The notes under the pieces are model-generated. The model was not told the DNA's origin. It did no database searches and saw only the letters and a list, made by a program, of their open reading frames with translations. The translations under genes were made by a program, and so were the position numbers. Positions 1,565-62,204 of a DNA stretch of 64,000 nt are shown here, one piece after another; positions within the stretch are counted from its first letter, which is position 1; each line of letters begins with the position of its first letter. Location: the IMG/VR virus record IMGVR_UViG_3300046516_001816, positions 186,001-250,000 of that record, one strand, 5' to 3'.

Positions 1565-2335
1565 ATGCGAAAAAACTACATAGAACGAATGATCGCTGCC
1601 TCGGGACCGAACGGGCAGCATCCGCTGGTATTGTTCTCAGGCGGCATGGATTCCACCATGCTCTTGCAAGAGCTCCTGCAATCGATGCACGTGTACACCT
1701 TTTACGTAGAAGCCAATCAGCACCCGCACAAGGTGACGCGCGAACGGGAAGCGCGAGACAATCTGCGTCGCATGTTTTACGATCGTTACGATTACGGCAT
1801 TCAGGACGACTTTGAATTCGAGCTGAACGAGGTGTTTGTCCAGACCAACAACTATGCGATGGTGCAACCGATCAGCTGGTTGACCGCAGCCCTGATTAAG
1901 TTTGATCCGTCGCGGCACTCGGGCGTGGCGATTGGCTATTTGCTGGGCGATCAAGCCCCAGCGTTTCGTCGGGAGATGGAAGACTTCTGGCGTTCAGGCT
2001 GGGCGTTGTTGCGCGGCATGCAAGAACCCGCTCCGCCCTTGTGGTTCCCGTTGTTGGACCACGGCTACACCAAGTACGAAGTGCTCAAGCGACTGAGTCA
2101 CGACCTGATGAGCAATACGTGGGTATGTGAAAATCCCCACAAGTACGACAACCAGATTGTTGAATGCAAGCACTGCAAGCCGTGTCAGCTGTTGCGGGCG
2201 ACGCTGGATGACTGGCGAGATCATCACACCGAAGAACATCCGTATCGAACGCTCCTGTCTGTGCATGCTGGTCAACTGAAGTTTGACTTCGTTGAAGAAG
2301 ACGACAACGACTGTGACCTTAAAGCCGCAGCGTAA
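1565..2335 (+). CDS. queC: QueC-like (7-cyano-7-deazaguanine synthase family) PP-loop ATPase
   Basis: VLFSGGMDST PP-loop; C-terminal CENP...CKHCKPC zinc site. Confidence 0.75.
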   Translation: MRKNYIERMIAASGPNGQHPLVLFSGGMDSTMLLQELLQSMHVYTFYVEANQHPHKVTREREARDNLRRMFYDRYDYGIQDDFEFELNEVFVQTNNYAMVQPISWLTAALIKFDPSRHSGVAIGYLLGDQAPAFRREMEDFWRSGWALLRGMQEPAPPLWFPLLDHGYTKYEVLKRLSHDLMSNTWVCENPHKYDNQIVECKHCKPCQLLRATLDDWRDHHTEEHPYRTLLSVHAGQLKFDFVEEDDNDCDLKAAA

Positions 2336-2450
2336 GAAAAACAATAGATAAGTGGGATTGAAAATAAAAATAGACTTATATAACGTCTATGAGCGTAACC
2401 CTAAGAAATGCTCACTAATCCCATTACTCTTTATAAAGTCTGAAAACAAA

Positions 2451-4646
2451 ATGAACAACAAACTCCTTTCTGCTTTGCTCATCGGTTTCTTTGCTTCGTC
2501 GTCCGCGATGGCCAGCTGCGGCAACGGTAGTAGCGGCAATGGCTGCTCGGGCAGCTCGCCGGAGACGATCAGTTCGGTGAATATCAACGGCACTACCGTC
2601 ACAACGAAGCTTTCGGACGGCAGTTCGGTTTCGGGTTCGGTCACGGGTCTGGCGACGTCCGCGCAACTCAGCACCACCAACAACAACGTCGCGGTGAACA
2701 CCGCATCTATCAACGGCATGCAGACGCAGCTCAACAGCGCCACGTCGGGCTTGAGCAACGTCTCCCAAGGTCTGGTCGCTGAAGGCAATCGCGCTGTCGC
2801 AGCTGAGGCGGGTCTTCAGTCGCAACTGAACGGAGCCATTTCGCAAGCAGGTGCCGCCATCGGTGGCCTGCAAGCTGCGCAAACGCAAACGCAGACCCAG
2901 GTCAACGCGAACACCGCAGCGATCTCGGCTAACGCTGATCAAATCGTCGCCGTGGGCAATGCCGTGACTTCGGAAAGCACGCGCGCCAGCGCCGCTGAAG
3001 GAACGCTCGCGGGTGGTGTGGCAGCCAACTCGGTAGCCGTCGTCGCTGAAACGAGCCGCGCAACCACTGCTGAAGGTGGCCTGCAATCGCAAATCACCGC
3101 GACGAATTCGCAGGTTGCCTCCAACACGTCGGCGATCGGGACCAACGCGCAAGCTATCTCCGCGGAGACGCAACGCGCGACCGCTGCTGAAACGACCATC
3201 AAGGCCCAAGCCACGGGCGCCATGGCTACGGCCAGCAGCGCGCTGGACAACTCCAACACGGCCATGAACACGGCCAATGCTGCGAGCACCACGGCCGGTC
3301 AAGCGAAGTCGATCGCTAATGGTGCGGACGCCAAGGCCAACACAGCCGTCGGTATCGCCACGGGCGCAGCGATCACGGCAACTGGTGCCGCTATCGTCGC
3401 GGGTCACGCAGAAGGTGTTGCAGAAGGTGCAGCTGCGCAAGCTAAGACGGCAACGTCGACGGCGAACACGGCATTGAGCCAGTCGGGTCAGGCACTGAAT
3501 GCTGCATCGAACGCAGGCACGGCAGCGGCGGCTGCACAAGTCACGGCCAATCAAGGCGTGGCGAATGCAGCGCATGCTCAGGGCACGGCCAATGCAGCAC
3601 TGGCTGCCGCGAAGGATGCGGATGCGGACGCGGATCACGCGCAAGCGACGGCTAACCATGCTGACAAGGCAGCCGCGGCTGCTCAGTCGACGGGCAATGC
3701 CGCCCTGTCGCTGGCAGGTACGGCGCAAGCCACGGGTACGGCTGCACTGACGCTCGCTGGTCAAGGTGTGGCGGCTGCCGGCAAAGCACAAGCCACGGCT
3801 AACGTAGCGTTGGGTGTAGGTATTGCAGCAGGGGCAGCTGCCGCGCATGCGCAAGGTACCGCGAATGCAGCTCTGACGGCCACGGGTGCAGAAACCAGCC
3901 GGGCGACAGCCGCAGAGCAACACCTGCAATCGCAGACGACGGCCAATGCATCGGCTATCTCGAGCGAAACGTCGCGCGCTTCGGCTGCTGAAGCGAACCT
4001 GCAAAAGCAGACCACGTCGAACACGAAGGCTATCAAGTCGGAAAGCCAACGTGCTCAAGCTGCGGAAGCCACGAACGCTCATGCCATCTCGGCAGAAACG
4101 TCACGTGCAACTGCGGCTGAAACGAATCTGCAAAAGCAAACCGATGCCAACGGGAAGGCTATCACCACCGAGTCCGCTCGGGCCCAGGGCGCCGAAGCCG
4201 GTATCCAGTCGCAAGTGACGACGCAAGGCAGCAGCATCACCGATCTGCAACAGAAGCAAGCGAATGACACGGTCGCTCAGGCAAAAGCCATGGTCGACAC
4301 GTCGGCGCAAGATCGTGCGTATGCGCAATCGCTGCAACACGATGCCATTCAGCAGTCCCAGCAGTATACGGACATGAAGTTCAATCAAGCTGAAGCGGAT
4401 ATCTCGAAGCTGCGTAGCGATATGTACGGTGGTGTCGCGTCGGCCCTGGCAGTTGCAGGTCTGCCGCAAGCTACGCCGGGTCACACGCTGGTGGGTGGTG
4501 CTGCATCGACCTACCATGGCCAACAAGCCCTGGCGTTCGGTGCGTCGTTCGCCACTGCCAATGAGCACTGGATTGTCAAGGCCGCAGTGACCACGAATAC
4601 CCGTGGTGACTTCGGTGCAGTGATCGGTGCGGGTCGTCAGTTCTAA
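2451..4646 (+). CDS. YadA-type trimeric autotransporter adhesin
   Basis: Signal peptide MNNKLLSALLIGFFASSSAMA; Ala-rich coiled-coil stalk with E(T/S)xRAxAAE repeats; YTD motif; C-terminal anchor GGVASALAVAGLPQ...GAGRQF ending in Phe. Confidence 0.9.
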   Translation: MNNKLLSALLIGFFASSSAMASCGNGSSGNGCSGSSPETISSVNINGTTVTTKLSDGSSVSGSVTGLATSAQLSTTNNNVAVNTASINGMQTQLNSATSGLSNVSQGLVAEGNRAVAAEAGLQSQLNGAISQAGAAIGGLQAAQTQTQTQVNANTAAISANADQIVAVGNAVTSESTRASAAEGTLAGGVAANSVAVVAETSRATTAEGGLQSQITATNSQVASNTSAIGTNAQAISAETQRATAAETTIKAQATGAMATASSALDNSNTAMNTANAASTTAGQAKSIANGADAKANTAVGIATGAAITATGAAIVAGHAEGVAEGAAAQAKTATSTANTALSQSGQALNAASNAGTAAAAAQVTANQGVANAAHAQGTANAALAAAKDADADADHAQATANHADKAAAAAQSTGNAALSLAGTAQATGTAALTLAGQGVAAAGKAQATANVALGVGIAAGAAAAHAQGTANAALTATGAETSRATAAEQHLQSQTTANASAISSETSRASAAEANLQKQTTSNTKAIKSESQRAQAAEATNAHAISAETSRATAAETNLQKQTDANGKAITTESARAQGAEAGIQSQVTTQGSSITDLQQKQANDTVAQAKAMVDTSAQDRAYAQSLQHDAIQQSQQYTDMKFNQAEADISKLRSDMYGGVASALAVAGLPQATPGHTLVGGAASTYHGQQALAFGASFATANEHWIVKAAVTTNTRGDFGAVIGAGRQF

Positions 4647-4660
4647 GCGGTAACGCAAAA

Positions 4661-4690
4661 AGGAGGGCACTTCGGTGTCCTTCTTTTTTT
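4661..4690 (+). terminator. Intrinsic terminator
   Basis: GGAGGGCAC-TTCG-GTGTCCTTC hairpin followed by a T-run. Confidence 0.8.
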
Positions 4691-4723
4691 GTATGCCGTG
4701 ACGATTGCAGATTAAAATGGCCA

Positions 4724-4731
4724 CATATTAC
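4724..4731 (+). promoter_or_regulatory. phiKZ-type early promoter-like motif (CATATTAC)
   Basis: One mismatch to TATATTAC; AT-rich context between a terminator and the next gene. Confidence 0.5.
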
Positions 4732-4791
4732 CACCTTGGACAATGCCATCAAGGTAAGTCCTAACTCTTATCCTAAACCAAGGTGAACGCT

Positions 4792-5223
4792 ATGAACAAC
4801 GCATCGGACCTCAAGAAAGAAATGAACATGACCACGGGTATGCTGGTCTTGCTGAACATTATCACGCTCGGCATCTATCCCGTGATCTGGATGTACAAGC
4901 ACGCGAAGGTCGCGAACGCCATCGTGGGCGACCAGCTCTACAGCGACCTGTTCGTCACGGTGCAGGCCGTGCTCGTGGTGCTGAACGTGCTGTGTTTGTT
5001 CACGGGCTACGGCTCGATCTTCGGCTTGATCGCTGGCATCGTCTGGGTGATCTGGGCTTTCAAAGCCAAGAACATTCTCACGACCTACGCGGCCAAGCAA
5101 CTGGGCATCGATTTACGCATGAACAGCGTGTGGACCTTTTTCTTCACGGTGTTCTACGTCCAGTACTGCATCAACGATTTGCCGAATGCCGCTGCGCGAC
5201 AAACGGCTCTGCGCGCTGTCTAA
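4792..5223 (+). CDS. DUF4234-like membrane protein
   Basis: LLNIITLGIYPVIWMYK motif and several hydrophobic helices. Confidence 0.7.
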   Translation: MNNASDLKKEMNMTTGMLVLLNIITLGIYPVIWMYKHAKVANAIVGDQLYSDLFVTVQAVLVVLNVLCLFTGYGSIFGLIAGIVWVIWAFKAKNILTTYAAKQLGIDLRMNSVWTFFFTVFYVQYCINDLPNAAARQTALRAV

Positions 5224-9617: not shown

Positions 9618-10559
9618 ATGACTTGCATCGTGTGGCACAAAGGTAAGCTGTATGCGGATTCGTATACCGTGAAAGAAAACGAGACCTTCCAGTCGCTCAC
9701 CAAGATTACGCAGTACGTCACGCCCGTGAAGGTGGTCTGCACGCTGCCGGGGTTTGACATCAATGACCGGGTGTTTGCCTGGACGGGCTCGGGTGGCAAT
9801 GCCGCCATGAAGAAGTTTGCCGATTGGCTGGAAATCGAAGGCGCGAACCCGGACGCTCAAGGTCGGTTTGGCGCTATCTTTGATTTCTATACGTTGGTGG
9901 CCGATCAGCAGTTGGTCAACGGCATGGGCAATCTGTTCGAGATCTTCTTTGTGGGCGAACAGTACAACCATAGCTTTCGGTTGGACTACACGAAGGGCTT
10001 TTCGTATCAGCGGCTGGATAAGAACGAGTCGGTCTTCTACGGCTCGGGTCACCAGCTGTGCCTGAACTTCATGAAGGAATGGCAGGATCCGGTGCGTGCC
10101 ATGCTGGAAACCTTCTTTATCGATCCGGCCTCGGGCGGCATGATCGAGATCTGGGGATGGCGCGAACCGAGACCCGAAGATGTCCTGCCGCACTTTCATC
10201 GCGAAGGCATCGTGATGGATATTCCGAAGGAGCATCTGCGGTACTTCTTGGACCATCTGTGCAAGAATAAGCGGAAGCCGATTCCGCCGCACTATATCCG
10301 TAAGGGTGAGGCGGACGTGATGCTCGCACGCGCGGCGAAGCTTAACCTGGAATTGGAAGAGACGATCGCCAAGCAAGCCAGGTTGATTGCACGTCTTCAG
10401 AAACAGTTGGGGATCGTGCCAGCGAAGAAGGTAGTCAAAAAACCGGCTGCCAAGAAAGTCGAAGTCCACGCACTACCTGCGCCGAAGTCCGCAGGCCAAC
10501 CGATAGTTGGGACCAAGCGTGCGTCGCTTAAGCCCAATCACCGTCAACCATCCATCTAA
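9618..10559 (+). CDS. Ntn-hydrolase (HslV/proteasome-beta-like) peptidase candidate with a basic C-terminal tail
   Basis: N-terminal MTCIV..G.LYADS, internal GSG motifs and a DPASGG.I motif typical of phage proteasome-beta-like proteins. Confidence 0.55.
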   Translation: MTCIVWHKGKLYADSYTVKENETFQSLTKITQYVTPVKVVCTLPGFDINDRVFAWTGSGGNAAMKKFADWLEIEGANPDAQGRFGAIFDFYTLVADQQLVNGMGNLFEIFFVGEQYNHSFRLDYTKGFSYQRLDKNESVFYGSGHQLCLNFMKEWQDPVRAMLETFFIDPASGGMIEIWGWREPRPEDVLPHFHREGIVMDIPKEHLRYFLDHLCKNKRKPIPPHYIRKGEADVMLARAAKLNLELEETIAKQARLIARLQKQLGIVPAKKVVKKPAAKKVEVHALPAPKSAGQPIVGTKRASLKPNHRQPSI

Positions 10560-11852: not shown

Positions 11853-12103
11853 TGGAACTCGCAAATCACTTGCTGGCTTCCCGCGAATTCTTTATGGGCG
11901 CGCTGGTGATGGGCATCCTGATGTTCGTGCTGATGGTCTACGCGGGCTATCTGCGGGCGCAGAATCTGTACCTCTCGTATCGCGCCGGCACCCCGGTGAA
12001 GCTCGGCGATGAGTTCTATTACCTGGTCCCTGAGGGCCAGTACAACCGGCTGATGACGCTGAAAAACCAACACGTCCAAGAACTAAGGAAACGAAGAATA
12101 TGA
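11849..12103 (+). CDS. Small single-pass membrane protein
   Basis: Hydrophobic segment [22 protein letters not shown]. Confidence 0.65.
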
Positions 12104-12876
12104 GCATCCTGTCTGACAACCAGATTCGCAGCCGTTGCCTGATTCCGACGCACGTGTTTGTAAATACCCAGAATGCGACGCGTACGTACTATCACGTCGC
12201 TGATAGCGCCATCTACGTGATGAATACGGGCCGGGTCGCGACGACTGACAACGCTTACGCGCACTGGAAGAGCTTGCTGCGCCCCCTCACGGAGGCGGAG
12301 ATCGCCGGTTATTGCGCGATGTATCCGCGCATGATCGCGCCGTTTGAAACGGAGCTGGTTCGTCAACGTAGTATCCCACTCAGTGAGGTGCACGGCTACA
12401 TCGAAAAGGTCATCTCCTACGGCACGTCGTCTTACGGCTACGACGTACGCTGCGCCGACGAGTTTAAGATCTTCACCAACATCAATTCGACGGTGATCGA
12501 TCCGAAGAACTTCGACGACAAGTCGTTCGTGGACTTTAAGGGCGATGTCTGTATCATCCCCCCGAATTCGTTTGCGCTCGCGCGCACCGTGGAGAAGTTC
12601 CATATCCCGCGCGACGTGCTGACGGTCTGCTTGGGCAAATCGACCTACGCGCGCTGCGGTATCATCGTGAACGTGACACCGTTCGAGCCGGAATGGGAAG
12701 GCTACGTGACGCTGGAGTTCAGCAACACGACGCCATTGCCCGCGAAGATCTACGCCCATGAAGGCGTGGCGCAAGTGCTGTTCCTGAAGGCCGACGATAC
12801 GTGCGAGACGTCGTACGCAGACCGCGGTGGCAAGTATCAGGGCCAGGCTGCTGAAGTCGTCTGTCCGAAAGTCTAA
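12100..12876 (+). CDS. dcd: dCTP deaminase with an N-terminal insertion
   Basis: [36 protein letters not shown] and GKYQGQ motifs. Confidence 0.95.
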
Positions 12877-17278: not shown

Positions 17279-19378
17279 TTTGAATCATTTTTCATAACTC
17301 ACCCATCAGGAGCAAATGTATCACGAGATCCAGGCTTCCAATATATAAGAGTGTGGCAAATGAAAGCAGTCGCACACCGAACGGAAACGCACCCTGTTGT
17401 TTAGTCACCCAAACCAAACCAGTGTATCAAAGCGATTCATGCACCCAGCTCGCGCAGTGTATCAATGAACTTCAGGCATCCGGGTACGGAAGTGCGTCGA
17501 ATCCATCACGCTCCCATCGTGGATGAGCGCGTCGACAGGGAAAATCCACCCAATGCAAGCTGAGCGCATCAACGATGTAAACTCACCCGATTCAACGTAG
17601 TGAGATAGAGAGACCAACGCCCCCACGAATCGTTAGCGTGTCATAGACGTTGAGTCGCCCAATATGTAGCAGCGTACCATGTGATAATAGTCACCCTTAA
17701 AGGACAAGTGCGTCAATAGCAAAGTGTCCGCCAGTTGAAGTCAACGTATCAAGGACAACCGCCAGTCAACCAGCTGTGAAGAGTGAACTTTCAAGAAGAG
17801 GCGCCCAGAAGGGGTCAGTGTGACAGGGCAGATAAGTCACCCATCGTTTCGAACTGAGTCAAGAACATGTGAGCCTACCGGGTTAACATGCGTACCATGG
17901 GGCGAGCGTCACCCATTTAAGTTCAGTGTGTCATACGGCAAATGTAACCCAAATAGATTTCGTAGTGAAGCAATGGATAGAAGGCACCCAATGTCTACGA
18001 TTGTATCAAAAGACTAGCTCCACCCAAGGTCTTCTAGTGTATCAATCTGGTATTGCCGACCATAAGTGGGCCAGTGCGCCAAAAGACGAAAGTAGTCCAG
18101 CAGGAAGTAAGTGTAACACGAGAGATATGACGTCCATACTCAACAACTGTGTCACGCGTGTCAGTCGTCCAGACAGGTAAAGTGCATCACAGAAACTACT
18201 TCCTCCAGTACGAAGAAGTGGATCAGTCCGTGCGCAGTCACCCATAGAGCATGAGTGTTTCAGAAGGGTTCAATGCAACCGATGTAGTTGAGTGCATCAA
18301 GCCGCATAGCGACACCCAAAGATGATGAGTGTATCAAAAGACCTAATTTTTACCCATAGACTAGGTGTGTATCATTCCGAAGCAGTCACCCAGTGAACAG
18401 TAATGTATCAAGGTAGGACGATGTCGCCCAGCGATTCGAGTGTAGCACGGTAGATGTGTCATCCAGAACAGGTATTTGTATCAAATAGCATAGTCATCCA
18501 GAGTGGACCAGTGGATCAGAACCATTGATTCAACCGAACGACCCAGTGCAGCAAAGGAGTCTAGTCGCACAGTAGTCGCATTGCAGCAACATTGCACAGT
18601 CCCCCATATCGTCCGATTGTATCAAAACTTGTAATGCCTCCAGTAATACTTAGTGTAGCAATCTGCTCCAGTCACCCATTGTGATAGATTGTAGCAAATG
18701 AGGATAGCCACCCTATGTGAGCAATTATATCAGCAATCATAAACCCTCCATAGTTAGCTAGTGGATCAAGGTGTCTATGTCACCCAGATCGACCCAGTGT
18801 AGCAAAGAACGGGAGTCCACCGCAAAACCGATTTGAACCAAAGTTATTACGCGCCCAAAACATGGAAGTGGGTCATGGAGAAACATTTCACCCAGCCCCG
18901 TTGACCGTATCAGTCTGCAAACTTCACCCATTGTAACACAGTGTATCATTGTAGGGTAGTCACCCGGAATCCTAACTGAACCAGAGACAGGAAGCCGCCC
19001 GATTAATAACAGTGTATCAACCTGAACATGTCGCCCAGATTGTCTTAGTGTATCAAAGTACGCACTGCATCCATTGAAATTCAGTGTATCGCAGTTGTAG
19101 AGTCGACCATATCTGGAAAGTGTAGCAAGATGGATTAGCCTTCCAATCCAGGAATGGAATCAAGTGCAACAAGCCACCCGTCGTAAGCTAGTGTATCAAT
19201 CACGCAAATCCACCCAACCAGTATTAGTGTATCAGTGCATTGAATTCCCCCATTGGAGAGAAGTGTATTAAGGTCCGAAAGTCCAGCAAATCGTAATAGT
19301 GCATCAGGGTTTTACAGTCACCCATCGTGCTCATGTGTATCAATCATCATCAGGCACCCAGAGTAGTTCAGTGTCAAC
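17279..19378 (+). repeat. TIGR-like dual-repeat array (~58 units of ~36 nt) encoding putative tigRNA guides
   Basis: Alternating degenerate 9-nt repeats AGTCACCCA and AGTGTATCA separated by ~9-nt unique spacers, e.g. 17403 AGTCACCCA-aaccaaacc-AGTGTATCA-aagcgattc; no credible ORF; abuts a Nop-domain gene. Confidence 0.9.
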
Positions 19379-19407
19379 AAACTAAACCAAACCAAGGAAA
19401 CTGTATC

Positions 19408-20652
19408 ATGACGACGCAACTCACTCCCGCATATAACCCCAACCTGGCTGTGATCCGCACGATGGTGCGCTCGGCCTACGATATGCAGGATCTGCGCATT
19501 CAGATGGGCAACCGTGTGACGGCTAGCTTCAAGGCCAAGCTCGGATTGCGTCAAGACGGCATGAGCGAGAAAGAGCTCGAGAAGCAAGAGAAGGGCATCC
19601 TCGATCAGCTGCGCGTGTCCTATCGTCGTATCACCGACGGCGTCGTGGCCGAACACGGCGAAGACATCAAAGCCGGCAAGCTCCCCACGGAACGCAAGTT
19701 CCAGGGCGACCAGTTGATTAGCCACTACAGCGAACTGCTGCTGGTGGATAACTACATGGCGACGCTCGCCAACGAACAACATCACTTCAAGGATATGGAA
19801 AAGATCCTGAAGAAGATCCCCATCTACACGGAATTCCTTACCGGTATCCGCGGCGTCGGTCCTGCCATGGCCGGCATCATCATTTCCGAAATCGACATTC
19901 ATAAAGCCGAATACCCGTCAAGCCTGTGGAAGCTCGCAGGGCTGGACGTGGTGTATATCGGGAAGTACACCGACGGCGAAGGCAAAGAGAAGACAATCCG
20001 CGGCTGGGACGTCGACTCGTGGTTCAATGACCCGGCCAACGAAGGCAAACAGTATCTGGCTGAAGGCAAGTACCCGGTGACCTACGAGGCCGTCGGCCGC
20101 TCGCGCAAGGACTTCTGTTTGGTGAAGAAGGAGTACATCAATAAAGAAGGGGAAGCCGCGCAACGTGACTCGATTACGTTCAACCCGTTTCTGAAGACGA
20201 AACTGGTGGGCGTGTTGGGCACGTCGTTTCTGCGGGCCGGCATTGCCAATGTCGATGGCAAGAAGTGCGGCGGGGCATCGCGGTTGGAACTCGCGAAGGA
20301 AGAAGGGTTCAATCCGAAGGACTACCCGGAGATGGAAGAGGACCAGGCCGTGATCGTCTATCTGCGTGCGAAGGGTCATGACGTTGTGGTGGAGCCCAGC
20401 AAGTACGCCGTGATGTATGCGGATTACAAGAACCGCCTGAACAACAACCCGAAGCACCGGGACAAAACCGCGCTGCACAAACACAACATGGCCATGCGCT
20501 TTATGGTCAAGCGTTTCTTGGTGGATCTGTACAACGCATGGCGGCGTCTGGAAGGCCTGGTGGTCGCCCCCGAGTACTCGGAAGGTGTGCTGGGTAAGGT
20601 GCACGGTCAAGCGAAGGAAGCCGGCTGGCAGCATCCGCGCTTCTCGCTGTAA
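19408..20652 (+). CDS. tasA: TasA-like Nop-domain RNA-binding protein (IS110/Nop superfamily, no nuclease domain)
   Basis: Coiled coil IRTMVRSAYDMQDLRIQMGNR; FLTGIRGVGPAMAGIIISEI; SSLWKLAGL; NPFLKTKL; C-terminal HKHNMAMRFMVKRFLVDLYNAWRRLEGL; no RuvC or HNH; directly downstream of the array. Confidence 0.85.
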   Translation: MTTQLTPAYNPNLAVIRTMVRSAYDMQDLRIQMGNRVTASFKAKLGLRQDGMSEKELEKQEKGILDQLRVSYRRITDGVVAEHGEDIKAGKLPTERKFQGDQLISHYSELLLVDNYMATLANEQHHFKDMEKILKKIPIYTEFLTGIRGVGPAMAGIIISEIDIHKAEYPSSLWKLAGLDVVYIGKYTDGEGKEKTIRGWDVDSWFNDPANEGKQYLAEGKYPVTYEAVGRSRKDFCLVKKEYINKEGEAAQRDSITFNPFLKTKLVGVLGTSFLRAGIANVDGKKCGGASRLELAKEEGFNPKDYPEMEEDQAVIVYLRAKGHDVVVEPSKYAVMYADYKNRLNNNPKHRDKTALHKHNMAMRFMVKRFLVDLYNAWRRLEGLVVAPEYSEGVLGKVHGQAKEAGWQHPRFSL

Positions 20653-21801: not shown

Positions 21802-22623
21802 TTACAGGTCAGAAAGAATCACCCAGAAGTCATCGGCGAGTTCCGGATTCAGCATGTACTGATAGGGCAGCCAGAAGCAGCCCGGGTTCGCGGGATCGCC
21901 CCACTGGTCGCCCCACGAATTCCGCACGAGGAAGCATTGCTTCGCATTGTCGTAACCGACGACGAGTACCGCGTGACCGCCCAGACAGTTTTCATACTGC
22001 GTGGGCATCGGCACGAAACCCGTGCGCGCGACTTCATCCGATTCGAAGGCATCGAAAATCTGGATGCCGACGATGATCGGACGATTGAACACCGCGAGCA
22101 CGTGTTGGAAAGCTTCCAGCGTTTGCGGCACCGCCTGGTACTGCAACGCCTTGTGGTTCAGCCCTTCGGCGTAGGATTCGACCGTAGGCTTGACCTTGAA
22201 GTGTTCCGTGTCGTCGCTGTACGGCCACGTGCTCTCCAACGGTGCACCGAACTTTGCGGCGACTTTGACGACGTCACGGATTTCACCGCCTGCGTCTTGA
22301 TCGACGTCACCTTCGAGGTCACGTTCGTTGTAGTAGAGGAACAGGCGCGACAGTGCTTGCGCGACGTTCGTACCCGTCTGAATGTTTTCTTCGTATTCCA
22401 GTGCACCGGCTGTGGCGTTCGCCGTGCACGAACCGAGCTGTCCCTGGTCTTTCACCGGCGAGCAATGCGCCGTGAGGTTCACCGAAGCCGGGATGGCTGC
22501 CGCGCCGAAGGTCAGATGGCCGTGGTACACATGGTCACGACTGTCGGCGGTTTTCTTTTTACGCTTATAAACGCGCGTGACCACCTTCTTTTGGGGTTCG
22601 GCGTGGTGTGGGGTATGCTGCAT
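21802..22623 (-). CDS. Papain-like C1A cysteine peptidase
   Basis: VKDQGQLGSCTANA (catalytic Cys), GGHAVLVVGYD (His), RNSWG (Asn). Confidence 0.92.
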   Translation of the reverse strand: MQHTPHHAEPQKKVVTRVYKRKKKTADSRDHVYHGHLTFGAAAIPASVNLTAHCSPVKDQGQLGSCTANATAGALEYEENIQTGTNVAQALSRLFLYYNERDLEGDVDQDAGGEIRDVVKVAAKFGAPLESTWPYSDDTEHFKVKPTVESYAEGLNHKALQYQAVPQTLEAFQHVLAVFNRPIIVGIQIFDAFESDEVARTGFVPMPTQYENCLGGHAVLVVGYDNAKQCFLVRNSWGDQWGDPANPGCFWLPYQYMLNPELADDFWVILSDL

Positions 22624-29727: not shown

Positions 29728-29811
29728 GGAAGGGTGCCCGAGTGGTTAAAGGGGGCGGACTGTAAATCCGTTGCTTCGGCTTCGTAGGTTCAAATCCTAC
29801 CTCTTCCACCA
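29728..29811 (+). tRNA. trnY: tRNA-Tyr(GTA)
   Basis: GGAAGGG/CTCTTCC acceptor; CTGTAAA anticodon loop; long variable arm; GTTCAAATC T-loop; CCA end. Confidence 0.95.
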
Positions 29812-29827
29812 TTTTCGTAGTAGCTGT

Positions 29828-29848
29828 TCCCTAGTAGCTCAGTTGGTA
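29828..29848 (+). pseudogene. 5' fragment of a disrupted tRNA-Asn
   Basis: TCCCTAG-TAGCTCAGTTGGTA; TCCCTAG pairs with CTGGGGA of the 3' fragment at 30293-30335. Confidence 0.8.
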
Positions 29849-29854
29849 AAACTC

Positions 29855-30208
29855 ATGACCGAAAAGATCTGCAAGATTCACGGCGCCACCAACTTCTTCC
29901 CGCGCGCTGACGGCGGTAGTCGCTGTGGTCAGTGTTCGGCAGATGCGGTTAAGAATCGTCGTCGAAAGATAAAGCTACTCGCCATCGAGTATAAAGGCGG
30001 CGCATGTGAGAACTGTGGTAATTCGTTTCATCCCGCAGTGTTTGAGTTTCACCACAAGGACCCTAGTCAAAAAGACTTTGCTGTTGGGGCCGGAGGTAAT
30101 GCTAGAGCATGGGAGCTTGTGAAAACAGAGCTGGATAAGTGTTCCATGCTTTGCGCGAATTGTCACCGTATCGAGCATTCAAAGTTGTTTGATGTAGATC
30201 CACGATAG
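29855..30208 (+). CDS. HNH homing endonuclease
   Basis: CxxC (CENC), FEFHHKDP, LCANCHRIEH; ATG directly follows the tRNA 5' fragment. Confidence 0.9.
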   Translation: MTEKICKIHGATNFFPRADGGSRCGQCSADAVKNRRRKIKLLAIEYKGGACENCGNSFHPAVFEFHHKDPSQKDFAVGAGGNARAWELVKTELDKCSMLCANCHRIEHSKLFDVDPR

Positions 30209-30275
30209 CTCAGTTGGTAGTAGCGTCGGACTGTTAATCCGAAGGTCCCTGGTTCGAGCCCAGGTCGTGGAGCCA
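30199..30275 (+). tRNA. trnN: tRNA-Asn(GTT)
   Basis: TCCACGA/TCGTGGA acceptor; TCGGA-CTGTTAA-TCCGA anticodon arm; T-arm; GCCA end. Confidence 0.93.
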
Positions 30276-30292
30276 AACATGTAGTACCCTAG

Positions 30293-30335
30293 GTTAATCC
30301 GTTGGTCGCTGGTTCAAGTCCAGCCTGGGGAGCCA
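30293..30335 (+). pseudogene. 3' fragment of a disrupted tRNA-Asn
   Basis: GTTAATCCGT-TGGTC-GCTGGTTCAAGTCCAGC-CTGGGGA-GCCA: anticodon, T-arm, acceptor 3' strand and CCA. Confidence 0.85.
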
Positions 30336-30350
30336 TTGATTTTGTAGTAC

Positions 30351-30426
30351 GCCCGTTTAGCTCAGCTGGTAGAGCAGCTCATTCGTAATGAGAAGGTCGG
30401 CGATTCGAATTCGTCATCGGGCACCA
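30351..30426 (+). tRNA. trnT: tRNA-Thr(CGT)
   Basis: 76-nt cloverleaf; CTCA-TTCGTAA-TGAG anticodon arm; CCA end. Confidence 0.9.
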
Positions 30427-30479
30427 GTTGATTCAGGAGTGATGCACTCAGTCCTGAATTTACTTTATAAGGCAGCATC

Positions 30480-30701
30480 ATGTTCGTATTAACCGCTAAG
30501 GTGTGGCGTAACGGCTCACTGTGTCGTGAGTATTACCAGCCGGAAGAAACCGGCTTTGTGCCCGGTGTCGTTTTTGGTCTGGATGGTGCGAAGCGCGCCA
30601 AGCAATACCAGACGGAAGAGGAAGCTATCGCTGATATCCCGGTGTTCAGACGGGCTGTTGGGTATCATGATCAACAGGGTGTCGACGTCGTTGCGGTGTA
30701 A
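30480..30701 (+). CDS. Small hypothetical protein between tRNA genes
   Basis: AAGG RBS; 73-aa ORF. Confidence 0.55.
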   Translation: MFVLTAKVWRNGSLCREYYQPEETGFVPGVVFGLDGAKRAKQYQTEEEAIADIPVFRRAVGYHDQQGVDVVAV

Positions 30702-30706
30702 GGTTT

Positions 30707-30780
30707 AGGGGAGTCGCCAAGTTGGTTAAGGCATCGGATTTTGATTCCGACATGCGTAGGTTCGAATCCTACTTCCCCTG
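30707..30780 (+). tRNA. trnQ: tRNA-Gln(TTG), CCA not encoded
   Basis: AGGGGAG/TTCCCCT acceptor; TCGGA-TTTTGAT-TCCGA anticodon arm; GTAGG-TTCGAAT-CCTAC T-arm. Confidence 0.9.
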
Positions 30781-30940
30781 TAAGGAAAGTGCCGGTTCGA
30801 CTCCGGATCAATCGTAGAGGGCTGGGTAGCGACGGGGGACGGTTCGATTCCGGGAAAGATCGCTGGGCGATAAGACGGGTAAAGAGCCCAGGCTTCGGCC
30901 TGGGCTTTATGCCGTTATGGTGTGTTACAGGAGAACGAAC

Positions 30941-62196: not shown

Positions 62197-62204
62197 TATA
62201 TTAC
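62197..62204 (+). promoter_or_regulatory. phiKZ-type early promoter TATATTAC
   Basis: Exact consensus; upstream of the operon containing the non-virion RNAP subunit, as expected for an early unit. Confidence 0.65.

What the first reader, a model, noticed from the sequence alone, without database searches (positions are those of the whole stretch)
2451..4646. Complete trimeric autotransporter adhesin encoded by an apparently lytic jumbo phage
Seen: Sec signal, long Ala-rich stalk with eight E(T/S)xRAxxAE repeats, YTD neck and an intact YadA beta-barrel anchor ending in Phe. Established: this architecture is exported through BAM to the host outer membrane and normally mediates adhesion or autoaggregation. 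Inference: the phage may remodel infected cells to clump with uninfected hosts or surfaces, or to mask receptors. Use as a virion fibre is the alternative.
Basis: partly seen in the sequence, partly recalled or inferred. Interest (0 to 1): 0.62.

Follow-up and report, generated by a model that had tools for sequence, protein, structure and literature searches.

The report
Jumbo-phage outer-membrane trimeric fibre gene
A 285-kb phage with no integration genes carries an intact gene for a trimeric autotransporter, a long fibre that bacteria normally anchor in their own outer membrane, and similar overlooked genes occur in at least three other groups of giant phages, so these viruses probably redecorate the surface of the cells they infect.

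Summary
Window 2451-4646 (+) encodes a 731-aa protein with a Sec signal peptide, about 610 residues of Ala-rich coiled coil, eight exact E(T/S)xRAxxAE motifs and a YadA-type anchor ending in Phe. Pfam scores the anchor at 45.7 bits against a cut-off of 22.7. One detail is wrong: "YTD" is the YxD coiled-coil motif, not a neck, and no head or neck domain is detectable.

The replicon is a phiKZ-like jumbo phage of 284,983 bp, with its own RNA polymerase subunit and no integrase or resolvase. The gene is not a stray host fragment:
- Its GC3 matches the phage's other genes.
- It has its own terminator and a conserved promoter-like element.
- Its ortholog in Burkholderia phage FLC9 shows purifying selection.

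A model of three copies of the C-terminal third gives a trimeric coiled coil entering a shared barrel (0.83; best control 0.00). The repeat motif is shared with phage tail-fibre proteins and is nearly absent from the nearest bacterial autotransporters.

Anchor-bearing autotransporters also occur in phage BCSR5, a 523-kb phage contig, and the fENko-Kae01/Munch group. In fENko-Kae01 published proteomics detected the protein during lytic growth.

The protein is most likely a fibre displayed on the infected cell. Whether it serves adhesion or exclusion is unresolved.

The parts
2336..2450 (+). AT-rich upstream intergenic region (about 31% GC, genome about 55%) holding a promoter-like element, an A-rich tract followed by TATATAAC at 2377-2384
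   Evidence: Sequence. TATATAA occurs only 10 times in 285 kb. Eight sites lie between my crude gene calls; the two at the TAA upstream fall before its real ATG, and one at 62200 is unchecked. Several share an AAATAATCTCAGnnnTATATAA(C/T) context. FLC9 gp240 has CAAATAATTTCAACCC-TATATAAC upstream. Function as a promoter is inferred.
2451..4646 (+). Complete CDS of the 731-aa trimeric autotransporter (P0002), including the stop codon
2451..2516 (+). Sec signal peptide, residues 1-22; predicted signal peptidase I cut after AMA
   Evidence: Hydrophobicity and motif scan. Conserved AFA/AMA site in FLC9 gp240 and P0003, where the -1 residue excludes a lipobox.
2517..2636 (+). Distal tip, residues 23-62: Cys-x8-Cys in a Gly/Ser/Asn-rich segment, then a short Ser/Thr/Val-rich non-helical stretch; the presumed ligand-contact end
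   Evidence: CGNGxSxGNGCSG is conserved with FLC9 gp240, and a Cys pair is also present in P0003. Non-helical in the low-confidence AF2 model. No relatives by word search.
2781..3191 (+). First cluster of stalk repeats, residues 111-247: one degenerate and three exact E(T/S)xRAxxAE motifs with N-x3-I layers
3351..3890 (+). Central stalk, residues 301-480, very Ala-rich (40% Ala over residues 301-505), with recurring AQxTANxAL-like motifs
   Evidence: predicted helical with low confidence
3351..3437 (+). 29-residue block (residues 301-329) identical in FLC9 gp240 despite 14 synonymous codon differences; role unknown
3891..4196 (+). Second cluster of five exact E(T/S)xRAxxAE repeats, residues 481-582; spacing 25, 25, 18, 25
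   Evidence: In the trimer model the contacts follow a 3/4 spacing with a 4-4-3 step at each motif, so the coiled coil is continuous.
4365..4373 (+). YxD motif (YTD, residues 639-641) in the anchor-proximal coiled coil
   Evidence: Invariant Y-T in alignment A1. Core contact in the trimer model. Motif defined in PMC2373917. Weak matches to YadA stalk fragments 3h7x and 3lt7.
4467..4643 (+). YadA-type beta-barrel membrane anchor, residues 673-731, with C-terminal Phe
   Evidence: Pfam PF03895, 45.7 bits; 51.6 bits in the genome search; Hia anchor match; inter-chain strand pairing of 684-689 with 724-726 in the trimer model
4647..4700 (+). Intrinsic terminator-like hairpin with a U-run directly after the stop codon, followed by the genome-wide TATGCCG element at 4692-4698
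   Evidence: Minimum free energy -29.2 kcal/mol, z = -7.5 against shuffles; motif survey. FLC9 gp240 and the megaphage gene have similar hairpins after their stops.

Best explanation
The gene encodes a headless trimeric autotransporter that the phage makes during infection and that the host installs in its own outer membrane.

Proposed pathway:
1. The precursor is exported by Sec and its 22-residue signal peptide is cut off.
2. Three C-termini, four strands each, are assembled by the host BAM machinery into one 12-stranded barrel.
3. The three passengers are threaded out through the barrel and zip into a single coiled-coil rod. If the whole passenger is coiled coil, the rod would be roughly 90 nm long.
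4. The rod ends in a small cysteine-containing tip.

The gene is a self-contained cassette with its own promoter-like element and terminator. It has been resident in the phage lineage for a long time and is under purifying selection. It looks like a chimera: a Burkholderiales-type anchor joined to a stalk built from a repeat otherwise seen in phage tail fibres.

Favoured role (inferred, not shown): the infected cell is coated with an adhesive fibre. This would hold it to neighbouring host cells or to a surface, so that progeny are released where new hosts are dense.

What is shown, by sequence and model: domain identity, the trimer-compatible fold, phage residency, selection, and recurrence in other jumbo phages. 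What is inferred: expression of this particular gene, timing, surface display and ligand.
For: Identity and fold:
- YadA_anchor is above the Pfam cut-off, and the solved Hia anchor matches.
- The signal peptide is conserved in homologs.
- The model of three copies of residues 476-731 scores 0.83, with a best control of 0.00. The three runs agree in at least 80% of contacts, and partner pLDDT is 85-94. In the tool's calibration, 21 of 30 proteins solved as pairs reached the mark and 0 of 23 solved as single chains did. That calibration used two copies, and similar complexes are already solved, so the pass shows likeness rather than binding.

Phage gene rather than host DNA:
- GC3 is 0.64, against 0.687 +/- 0.078 for the phage's genes and 0.90-0.94 for Burkholderia autotransporters.
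- A phage-type regulatory element lies directly downstream and a strong terminator follows the stop.

Selection:
- The ortholog in the cultured phage FLC9 is 47% identical over the full length.
- One 29-residue block has 14 synonymous and no non-synonymous differences. The major capsid proteins of the two phages are only 53% identical.

Chimeric stalk:
- The ExxRAxxAE motif is present in the phage-borne proteins and absent from 78 of the 80 nearest bacterial autotransporters.
- The motif is shared with proteins that match tail-fibre PHROGs, Gp53-like_C or Mtd_N.

Not a structural-module gene:
- Its neighbours are a QueC-like gene and a DUF4234 gene.

Recurrence and expression in lytic jumbo phages:
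- BCSR5 carries a 1261-aa autotransporter with head, stalk and anchor.
- A 523-kb phage contig carries one.
- fENko-Kae01 ENKO_420 and Munch gp428 carry the anchor.
- ENKO_420 gave 47 spectra in the >300 kDa fraction of a lytic lysate, against 52 for the portal protein (PMC11218385).

Family-level function: adhesion and autoaggregation (PMC7568254 abstract; PMC6555100).
Against: - There is no expression, localisation or binding data for this gene.
- The protein has no globular head, and autoaggregation by autotransporters is usually ascribed to head domains (PMC7568254 abstract). A purely adhesive role is therefore not the obvious default.
- The tip has no detectable relatives that could suggest a ligand.
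- There is no clear Shine-Dalgarno sequence before the ATG.
- The fENko-Kae01 proteomics concerns an analogous protein, not an ortholog, and cannot tell outer-membrane fragments from virions.
- Absence of integrases does not prove a strictly lytic life cycle.
Confidence: 0.6

Rival explanations
1. Superinfection exclusion or receptor shielding. The same outer-membrane fibre is made, but its use is to form a dense layer about 90 nm deep. This layer would keep other phages, and the phage's own progeny, from reaching receptors on the infected cell and on its debris. Phage T5's Llp lipoprotein does something similar for FhuA.
For: A rod without a head resembles a spacer more than a sticky adhesin. 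The promoter-like element resembles the AT-rich early promoters of phiKZ-type phages (my recollection of the phiKZ consensus; element shown), and early expression is typical of exclusion genes. The gene lies among small accessory genes. It recurs in phages with large genomes. I infer, without evidence here, that long infection cycles make superinfection costly for such phages.
Against: I found no reported case of an autotransporter acting as a phage shield. The conserved Cys-containing tip and the 29-residue invariant block suggest a specific interaction rather than bulk shielding. Timing of expression is unknown.
Confidence: 0.25
2. Carrier-state or lysogenic-conversion factor. The phage is not strictly lytic and persists as a plasmid-like or pseudolysogenic element. 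The fibre would then benefit the surviving host, as the prophage-borne Eib autotransporters of E. coli do.
For: Prophage-linked autotransporters are known (eib genes; PMC3153244). The closest anchors, at about 60-65% identity, sit in a small phage between DNA methyltransferases and the terminase, a typical position for accessory 'moron' genes. The gene has its own promoter-like element and terminator, as morons do.
Against: No integrase or resolvase is present. The phage has a phiKZ-type capsid and its own RNA polymerase, as known virulent jumbo phages do. Its authors regard fENko-Kae01, which carries an analogous gene, as strictly lytic. Partition genes were not searched for.
Confidence: 0.1
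3. Virion fibre. The protein is part of the particle and is used for adsorption, and the anchor-like C-terminus serves only as a trimerisation module.
For: The stalk repeats are shared with proteins that match tail-fibre families. 'YadA domain-containing structural proteins' are reported in lytic phages (PMC9146016). ENKO_420 was recovered with phage particles in a >300 kDa fraction. One homolog is annotated 'tail protein'.
Against: A cleavable Sec signal would send the protein to the periplasm, whereas tailed-phage virions assemble in the cytoplasm (established knowledge). The anchor keeps the full barrel signature and the terminal aromatic residue. There is no PHROG structural hit, and the gene is not in a structural module. 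The motif is absent from every other gene of the phage, including its own fibres. The fENko-Kae01 fraction also held polymerases, and its authors state that no conclusion on virion membership can be drawn.
Confidence: 0.04
4. Artefact or decaying passenger: host DNA joined to the contig by misassembly, or a recently captured host gene with no role for the phage.
For: The record is a metagenome-derived contig. The nearest bacterial anchors are from Burkholderia, the probable host group.
Against: Codon composition is phage-like. The phage's own regulatory motifs flank the gene. The frame is intact. The ortholog in an isolated, fully sequenced phage shows purifying selection.
Confidence: 0.01

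Closest known systems
Burkholderia phage FLC9 gp240 (BDD79759.1, annotated hypothetical protein)
   Same: Ortholog, 47% identical over the full length. It shares the signal peptide and CGNGxSxGNGCSG tip, the identical 29-residue central block, the ExxRAxxAE repeats, the YxD motif and the anchor. It also has the TATATAAC upstream element and a terminator hairpin. The host phage is the window phage's nearest relative by capsid protein.
   Different: FLC9 gp240 keeps a short head-repeat-plus-neck-like segment before the anchor, which the window protein lacks. It has more YxD repeats. It sits at a different place in an otherwise collinear region.
Classical trimeric autotransporter adhesins (YadA, Hia; type Vc secretion)
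   Same: Homologous C-terminal anchor, N-terminal signal peptide, coiled-coil stalk with YxD motif and N-x3-I layers, and a predicted trimer with a shared barrel.
   Different: No YadA_head or neck domain. The stalk repeat is essentially absent from the 80 nearest bacterial family members. The gene is encoded by a virus without lysogeny genes.
NadA/UspA2-type 'mostly coiled coil' autotransporters (oligomeric coiled-coil adhesins)
   Same: Architecture: signal peptide, long coiled coil with only a small N-terminal tip, and anchor. This comparison rests on my own knowledge of those proteins.
   Different: No passenger sequence similarity was detected; no NadA or UspA chain appeared in the PDB search at E <= 1. 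Their ligands are animal-host molecules, which is not expected here.
Eib immunoglobulin-binding autotransporters on E. coli prophages
   Same: Phage-borne trimeric autotransporters carried as accessory genes (PMC3153244). They cause aggregation and chain formation (PMC12511318 abstract).
   Different: Eib genes sit on temperate prophages and act for the lysogen. They also have YadA-like heads (my own knowledge). Here there is no integrase, no head and a jumbo lytic-type genome.
Autotransporters of other jumbo phages: BCSR5 QRE00188, fENko-Kae01 ENKO_420, Salmonella phage Munch gp428, and the 523-kb contig protein P0003
   Same: Signal peptide plus YadA anchor in large phage genomes, embedded among small unannotated genes and all annotated as hypothetical. 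P0003 also shares the repeats and the Cys-pair tip.
   Different: The passengers differ. BCSR5 has a classical head with ten stalk/neck domains. ENKO_420 and Munch gp428 have collagen-like repeats. The capsid lineages also appear to differ, so these look like separate acquisitions.
Phage tail-fibre shaft proteins carrying ExxRAxxAE repeats (metagenomic proteins P0007, P0009, P0012-P0017)
   Same: The same coiled-coil repeat, with 41-52% identity over 36-44% of the queried stretch, residues 500-731.
   Different: They have no signal peptide or anchor that I could detect. Instead they carry tail-fibre domains (Gp53-like_C, Mtd_N, tail-fibre PHROGs).

Membership tests
Trimeric autotransporter adhesin (type Vc secretion) | C-terminal YadA-like membrane anchor domain, stated to be the only domain homologous in all family members and the defining feature (PMC2373917) | tested here: met
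   PF03895 at 45.7 bits (cut-off 22.7), residues 673-731; 51.6 bits in the genome search; Hia anchor 3emo at E 7e-11
Trimeric autotransporter adhesin (type Vc secretion) | N-terminal Sec signal peptide | tested here: met
   The n-, h- and c-regions with A-x-A are seen by inspection and are conserved in three homologs. No dedicated predictor was available.
Trimeric autotransporter adhesin (type Vc secretion) | Obligate homotrimer: three chains of four strands form one barrel, with the coiled coil running through it | tested here: met
   In silico only. The three-copy model scores 0.83 against a best control of 0.00, pLDDT 85-94, with runs agreeing in at least 80% of contacts. In calibration, 21 of 30 solved pairs reached the mark and 0 of 23 single chains did. 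Similar complexes are solved, so the pass shows likeness.
Trimeric autotransporter adhesin (type Vc secretion) | C-terminal aromatic residue (beta-signal for BAM) | tested here: met
   The protein ends in ...GRQF; relatives end in F or W
Trimeric autotransporter adhesin (type Vc secretion) | Head and neck domains in the passenger (common but not defining) | tested here: not met
   No YadA_head or YadA_stalk hit at E <= 1. The passenger is predicted helical from about residue 63 (low confidence).
Trimeric autotransporter adhesin (type Vc secretion) | Surface display and adhesive activity | not testable with these tools
   Needs fractionation, surface proteolysis and binding or aggregation assays
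Phage tail fibre / virion fibre | Cytoplasmic assembly (no signal peptide), an attachment domain for the virion, and a gene in the tail module | tested here: not met
   A cleavable signal peptide is present. No PHROG match. Neighbours are a QueC-like gene and a DUF4234 gene. Only the repeat motif is shared.
Eib-type prophage autotransporters | Carried by an integrated temperate prophage; YadA-like head; immunoglobulin binding | tested here: not met
   No integrase or resolvase in the 285-kb record. No head domain. Immunoglobulin binding was not testable.
Moron (self-contained accessory cassette in a phage genome) | Own promoter and own terminator; position variable between related phages | tested here: inconclusive
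   The terminator is strong. The upstream element is conserved with FLC9, but its promoter activity is unproven. The gene's position differs between the two phages.

The most novel reading that the evidence does not exclude
Giant virulent phages of several unrelated lineages have independently acquired outer-membrane autotransporter fibres, in some cases rebuilding them from tail-fibre parts. They express these fibres during lytic infection to change how the infected cell sticks to, or is seen by, its neighbours. This would be a general 'infected-cell surface remodelling' strategy, for example making the doomed cell gather fresh hosts before it bursts. It has gone unnoticed because every such gene is annotated as hypothetical.
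Probability: 0.3. Interest if true: 0.8.

Novelty: new variant of a known kind. Interest (0 to 1): 0.6.

Why it matters
Trimeric autotransporters are studied as bacterial adhesins and virulence factors. The only phage link I could document is the Eib group on temperate prophages, where the lysogen benefits. A virulent phage gains nothing from a host that it kills within hours unless the fibre acts during the infection itself. An intact, selected and, in one related case, abundantly produced autotransporter in such phages therefore points to a phage-directed change of the infected cell's surface.

Three of the phages that carry such genes are cultured: FLC9, BCSR5 and fENko-Kae01. The question is therefore directly testable. 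It also matters for annotation, because all of these genes are currently labelled hypothetical and the fENko-Kae01 protein was reported as 'unknown function' in a proteome. Finally, the protein is a clear example of module exchange between tail fibres and autotransporters, running in the less familiar direction.

Tried and rejected
Searches that gave nothing or little:
No reads could be laid, so there is no expression evidence for this gene.
- Word searches with the passenger (residues 23-480) and the tip returned nothing. The first was swamped by low-complexity candidates, so it says little. Both see only proteins of 402-1279 aa.
- tblastn of the passenger parts against cultured phages gave no match, probably because of low-complexity masking. 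Default BLASTP between the window protein and FLC9 gp240 also under-reports the match, whereas MAFFT and uncorrected tblastn show it.
- The ESM Atlas search gave only scores below 0.8.

Analyses with limited value:
- The anchor tree (100 columns, 96 rows) is too poorly resolved to name a donor. It shows only that all close anchors are from Burkholderiales or from phages.
- The monomer AF2 model of residues 23-480 has low confidence (pLDDT 64.5). I used it only for secondary structure.

Readings considered and rejected:
- Lipoprotein (Cys23 after AMAS). The sequence matches a loose lipobox pattern, but the homologs have N or D at -1.
- The longer GTG start at 2352.
- The 552-aa antisense ORF at 2424-4082, which is a shadow of the Ala-rich frame.
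- The sigma-70 promoter scan found nothing significant near the gene.

Other points:
- The 'Acinetobacter phage MD-2021a' and Salmonella whole-genome-shotgun records that matched in the phage collection look like bacterial contigs and were not counted.
- Literature searches for jumbo phages with autotransporters or YadA found no report of this. The library does not hold subscription journals.
Full report
**1. The observation**

Window 2451-4646 (+) is one uninterrupted frame of 731 codons. I place the start at ATG 2451. A GTG at 2352 would add 33 residues, but the three closest homologs all begin directly with a signal peptide.

- **Signal peptide.** Residues 1-22 have a basic n-region, an 11-residue hydrophobic core and an A-x-A cleavage motif. 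Cys23 loosely fits a lipobox, but the matching residue before the Cys is N in FLC9 gp240 and D in P0003. Both are incompatible with a lipobox, and all three keep A-x-A, so cleavage by signal peptidase I is the better reading.
- **Repeats.** There are exactly eight E[TS]xRAxxAE motifs and one degenerate copy, in two clusters (residues 111-247 and 481-582). In 20,000 shuffles the mean count was 0.0001. Even a looser form of the motif occurs only once more in the six-frame translation of the 285-kb genome.
- **Anchor.** Pfam finds only YadA_anchor, at residues 673-731 (45.7 bits, cut-off 22.7). The solved Hia anchor aligns to residues 616-730 (E 7e-11). The protein ends in Phe.
- **One correction.** "YTD" is not a neck. 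It is the YxD motif that marks coiled-coil repeats of these adhesins (PMC2373917; PMC6555100). No neck or head domain is detected.

**2. The replicon**

The window is bases 186,001-250,000 of a 284,983-bp virus record that CheckV rates as complete.

- It encodes a phiKZ-type major head protein (phrog_3231, E 1e-181), a DnaB-like helicase and a second helicase.
- It also has an RNA polymerase beta-like gene and four tRNAs.
- Its capsid protein is closest to that of Burkholderia phage FLC9 (52.8%), followed by Ralstonia jumbo phages (43%).
- No tyrosine or serine recombinase domain is present.

"Jumbo" is therefore certain. "Lytic" fits the data but is not proven. The host is probably a member of the Burkholderiaceae. 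That is an inference from the nearest phage and from the nearest bacterial anchors, which are Burkholderia cepacia complex at 50-57%, then Herbaspirillum, Paraburkholderia and Collimonas.

**3. A resident, selected phage gene**

- **Composition.** GC3 is 0.64, inside the phage's own distribution (0.687 +/- 0.078). Burkholderia autotransporter genes have 0.90-0.94.
- **Terminator.** A very stable hairpin with a U-run follows the stop codon directly (-29.2 kcal/mol, z -7.5). It runs into TATGCCG. In most of its 65 occurrences that element follows a GC-rich hairpin, many of them at intergenic sites.
- **Upstream region.** The 115-bp spacer before the gene is about 31% GC and carries TATATAAC after an A-rich tract. 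TATATAA occurs only ten times in the genome. Eight of these sites lie between my crude gene calls; the two at the TAA upstream fall before its real ATG, and one (window 62200) is unchecked. Several share a common upstream context. FLC9 gp240 has the same TATATAAC element and a similar terminator. The megaphage homolog also has a long AT-rich leader and a hairpin.
- **Ortholog.** FLC9 gp240 (721 aa, annotated hypothetical) is 47% identical over its full length. It shares the post-cleavage CGNGxSxGNGCSG tip and a 29-residue block with 14 synonymous and zero non-synonymous differences. That is purifying selection on a translated product.
- **Position.** The surrounding region is broadly collinear between the two phages, but the gene sits in different places. 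Its QueC-like neighbour in the window lies 7 kb away in FLC9. This fits a mobile, self-contained cassette.

**4. Structure**

Three copies of residues 476-731 were folded with controls.

- The score was 0.83 and the best control 0.00. Partner pLDDT was 85-94, and the three runs agreed in at least 80% of contacts.
- In the tool's calibration, 21 of 30 proteins solved as pairs reached the mark and 0 of 23 solved as single chains did. That calibration used two copies, not three. Similar complexes are already solved, so the pass shows likeness to a trimeric anchor rather than binding in itself.
- Contacts run with 3/4 spacing through all five C-terminal repeats. Each ExxRAxxAE motif falls on a 4-4-3 step, so the 25-residue repeat reads as 11+7+7. 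This describes one continuous three-stranded coiled coil with polar Glu layers.
- Residues 684-689 of one chain pair with 724-726 of the next, as expected in a shared 12-stranded barrel.

A single-chain AF2 model of residues 23-480 has low confidence (pLDDT 64.5). It predicts helix from about residue 63 onward, with breaks near 190-195 and 316-320, and a non-helical tip. If the whole passenger is coiled coil, about 610 residues would give a rod of roughly 90 nm. That length is an inference.

**5. Relatives**

- **Closest protein in the word search.** P0003 is 43-45% identical over the C-terminal 232-286 residues and shares the Cys-pair tip and the repeats. It lies on a contig of about 523 kb, packed with small unannotated genes on one strand. 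IMG/VR lists a near-identical contig as viral.
- **A smaller phage.** It was found in several samples and carries a 437-aa autotransporter with a 60-65% identical anchor and two of the repeats. The gene lies between DNA methyltransferases and the large terminase.
- **The repeat motif.** It is missing from 78 of the 80 nearest bacterial autotransporters, as far as each locus extended. It is shared with anchor-less proteins that match tail-fibre PHROGs, Gp53-like_C or Mtd_N. The protein therefore looks like a Burkholderiales-type anchor joined to a tail-fibre-type shaft. Exchange of modules between these adhesins and phage fibres is documented in the other direction (PMC4786415; PMC9146016).
- **Donor.** The anchor tree is too short to identify one.

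**6. Other jumbo phages**

- Burkholderia phage BCSR5 (227 kb) encodes a 1261-aa classical autotransporter with head repeats, ten stalk/neck domains and an anchor.
- Klebsiella phage fENko-Kae01 (360 kb) ENKO_420 and Salmonella phage Munch (350 kb) gp428 have a signal peptide, collagen-like repeats and an anchor at 67 bits. Homologs are present in Salmonella phages 7t3, SE_PL and PHA46.
- All of these genes are annotated as hypothetical.

The fENko-Kae01 authors consider their phage strictly lytic. They detected CDS_420 with 47 spectra in a >300 kDa ultrafiltration fraction of lysate, compared with 52 for the portal protein and 106 for the major capsid protein. They caution that this fraction does not establish virion membership, and it also contained polymerases (PMC11218385). 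This shows that an autotransporter of a lytic jumbo phage is made in quantity during infection. It does not show where the protein ends up, and it concerns an analog of the window's gene, not an ortholog.

**7. Mechanism**

Export, barrel insertion and passenger secretion follow from the family's established biology, and every sequence requirement for them is met. A cleavable Sec signal and a membrane barrel do not fit incorporation into virions, which assemble in the cytoplasm. I therefore put display on the infected cell's outer membrane at about 0.85.

The purpose is open:
- I favour adhesion or aggregation that keeps the infected cell among fresh hosts or on a surface (about 0.4).
- Shielding or superinfection exclusion comes next (about 0.25). 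The lack of a head and the possible early-type promoter speak for it.
- A carrier-state benefit (about 0.1), a virion role (about 0.04) and artefact (about 0.01) trail behind.

**8. Novelty**

The family is known, and prophage-borne members are known (Eib; PMC3153244). What I did not find in the literature available to me is:
- an intact, selected autotransporter in phages without lysogeny genes;
- its recurrence in several jumbo-phage lineages;
- this headless form with a tail-fibre-type shaft.

I rate it a new variant of a known kind, with interest 0.6.

**9. Limits**

- No signal-peptide predictor was available.
- The trimer support is a model of a fold that already has solved precedents.
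- Absence claims for the passenger rest on word-based searches that handle low-complexity sequence poorly.
- Promoter assignments are pattern-based, and my comparison with phiKZ promoters is from memory.

Noticed in passing
genome-wide; in the window at e.g. 4692, 6110, 13442, 25224, 30908, 49126, 51156, 52263, 62172: TATGCCG occurs 65 times in the genome, and in most cases it follows a GC-rich hairpin as (C)TTTATGCCG(T/C). These sites occur on both strands and often lie a short distance upstream of the next gene. They look like combined terminator-promoter units. None lies on the + strand in the 28 kb before the autotransporter gene.
   Followed up: partly
window 2377, 17342, 49153, 62200; genome 49606, 49673, 78753, 90832, 94938: TATATAA is very rare (10 sites in 285 kb). 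Eight sites lie between my crude gene calls; the two at the TAA upstream fall before its real ATG, and one (62200) is unchecked. Several share AAATAATCTCAGnnnTATATAA(C/T). This may be a second promoter class, perhaps for the phage's own RNA polymerase.
   Followed up: partly
window 29728-30781: Cluster of four tRNA genes (Tyr-GTA, Asn-GTT, Thr-CGT, Gln-TTG).
   Followed up: no
window 19327-20652 (+): A 441-aa ORF matches a PHROG annotated as transposase (phrog_4285, E 6e-29) but has no Pfam hit. It lies in the lowest-GC stretch of the window (18001-20000, 48.7% GC). It may be a mobile element inside the phage.
   Followed up: no
window 21802-22623 (-): Papain-family cysteine protease domain (Peptidase_C1, E 5e-18), on the strand opposite to most genes. 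This is unusual for a phage.
   Followed up: no
window 1565-2335 (+), 12100-12876 (+), 9618-10559 (+): Accessory metabolism genes: a QueC-like PP-loop protein directly upstream of the autotransporter (its FLC9 homolog is 7 kb from gp240), a dCTP deaminase-like protein, and a weak HslV-like peptidase match.
   Followed up: partly
window 4783-5223 (+): The gene directly downstream encodes a DUF4234 protein (E 2e-10), a domain of unknown function. It has no counterpart next to the FLC9 or megaphage homologs.
   Followed up: no
window 2424-4082 (-) and 4101-4724 (-): Long antisense open frames (552 and 207 aa) overlap the autotransporter gene. They are shadows of its Ala-rich, GC-rich coding frame, not genes. 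Similar shadow frames accompany the homologs in other loci.
   Followed up: yes
L098:3017-4234 (Klebsiella phage fENko-Kae01 ENKO_420); L100:1409-2734 (Salmonella phage Munch gp428): These are collagen-repeat autotransporters with YadA anchors in 350-360 kb enterobacterial jumbo phages, lying next to the tRNA cluster. The fENko-Kae01 protein was detected by mass spectrometry but reported as of unknown function.
   Followed up: partly
L009:3990-5303: A smaller phage, with contigs of 14-25 kb recovered in several samples (three of them identical over the 10-kb locus), carries a 437-aa autotransporter with head repeats, a neck and two ExxRAxxAE repeats. The gene lies between DNA methyltransferase genes and the large terminase.
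   Followed up: partly
phage collection records AFYI01000003.1, AGRM01000004.1, CAKLQH020000029.1: Some records in the 'phages' collection look like bacterial shotgun contigs (Salmonella, Acinetobacter) with ordinary chromosomal autotransporters. One match lies under a feature mis-annotated as a spore protein. Such records can inflate counts of phage-borne adhesins.
   Followed up: no
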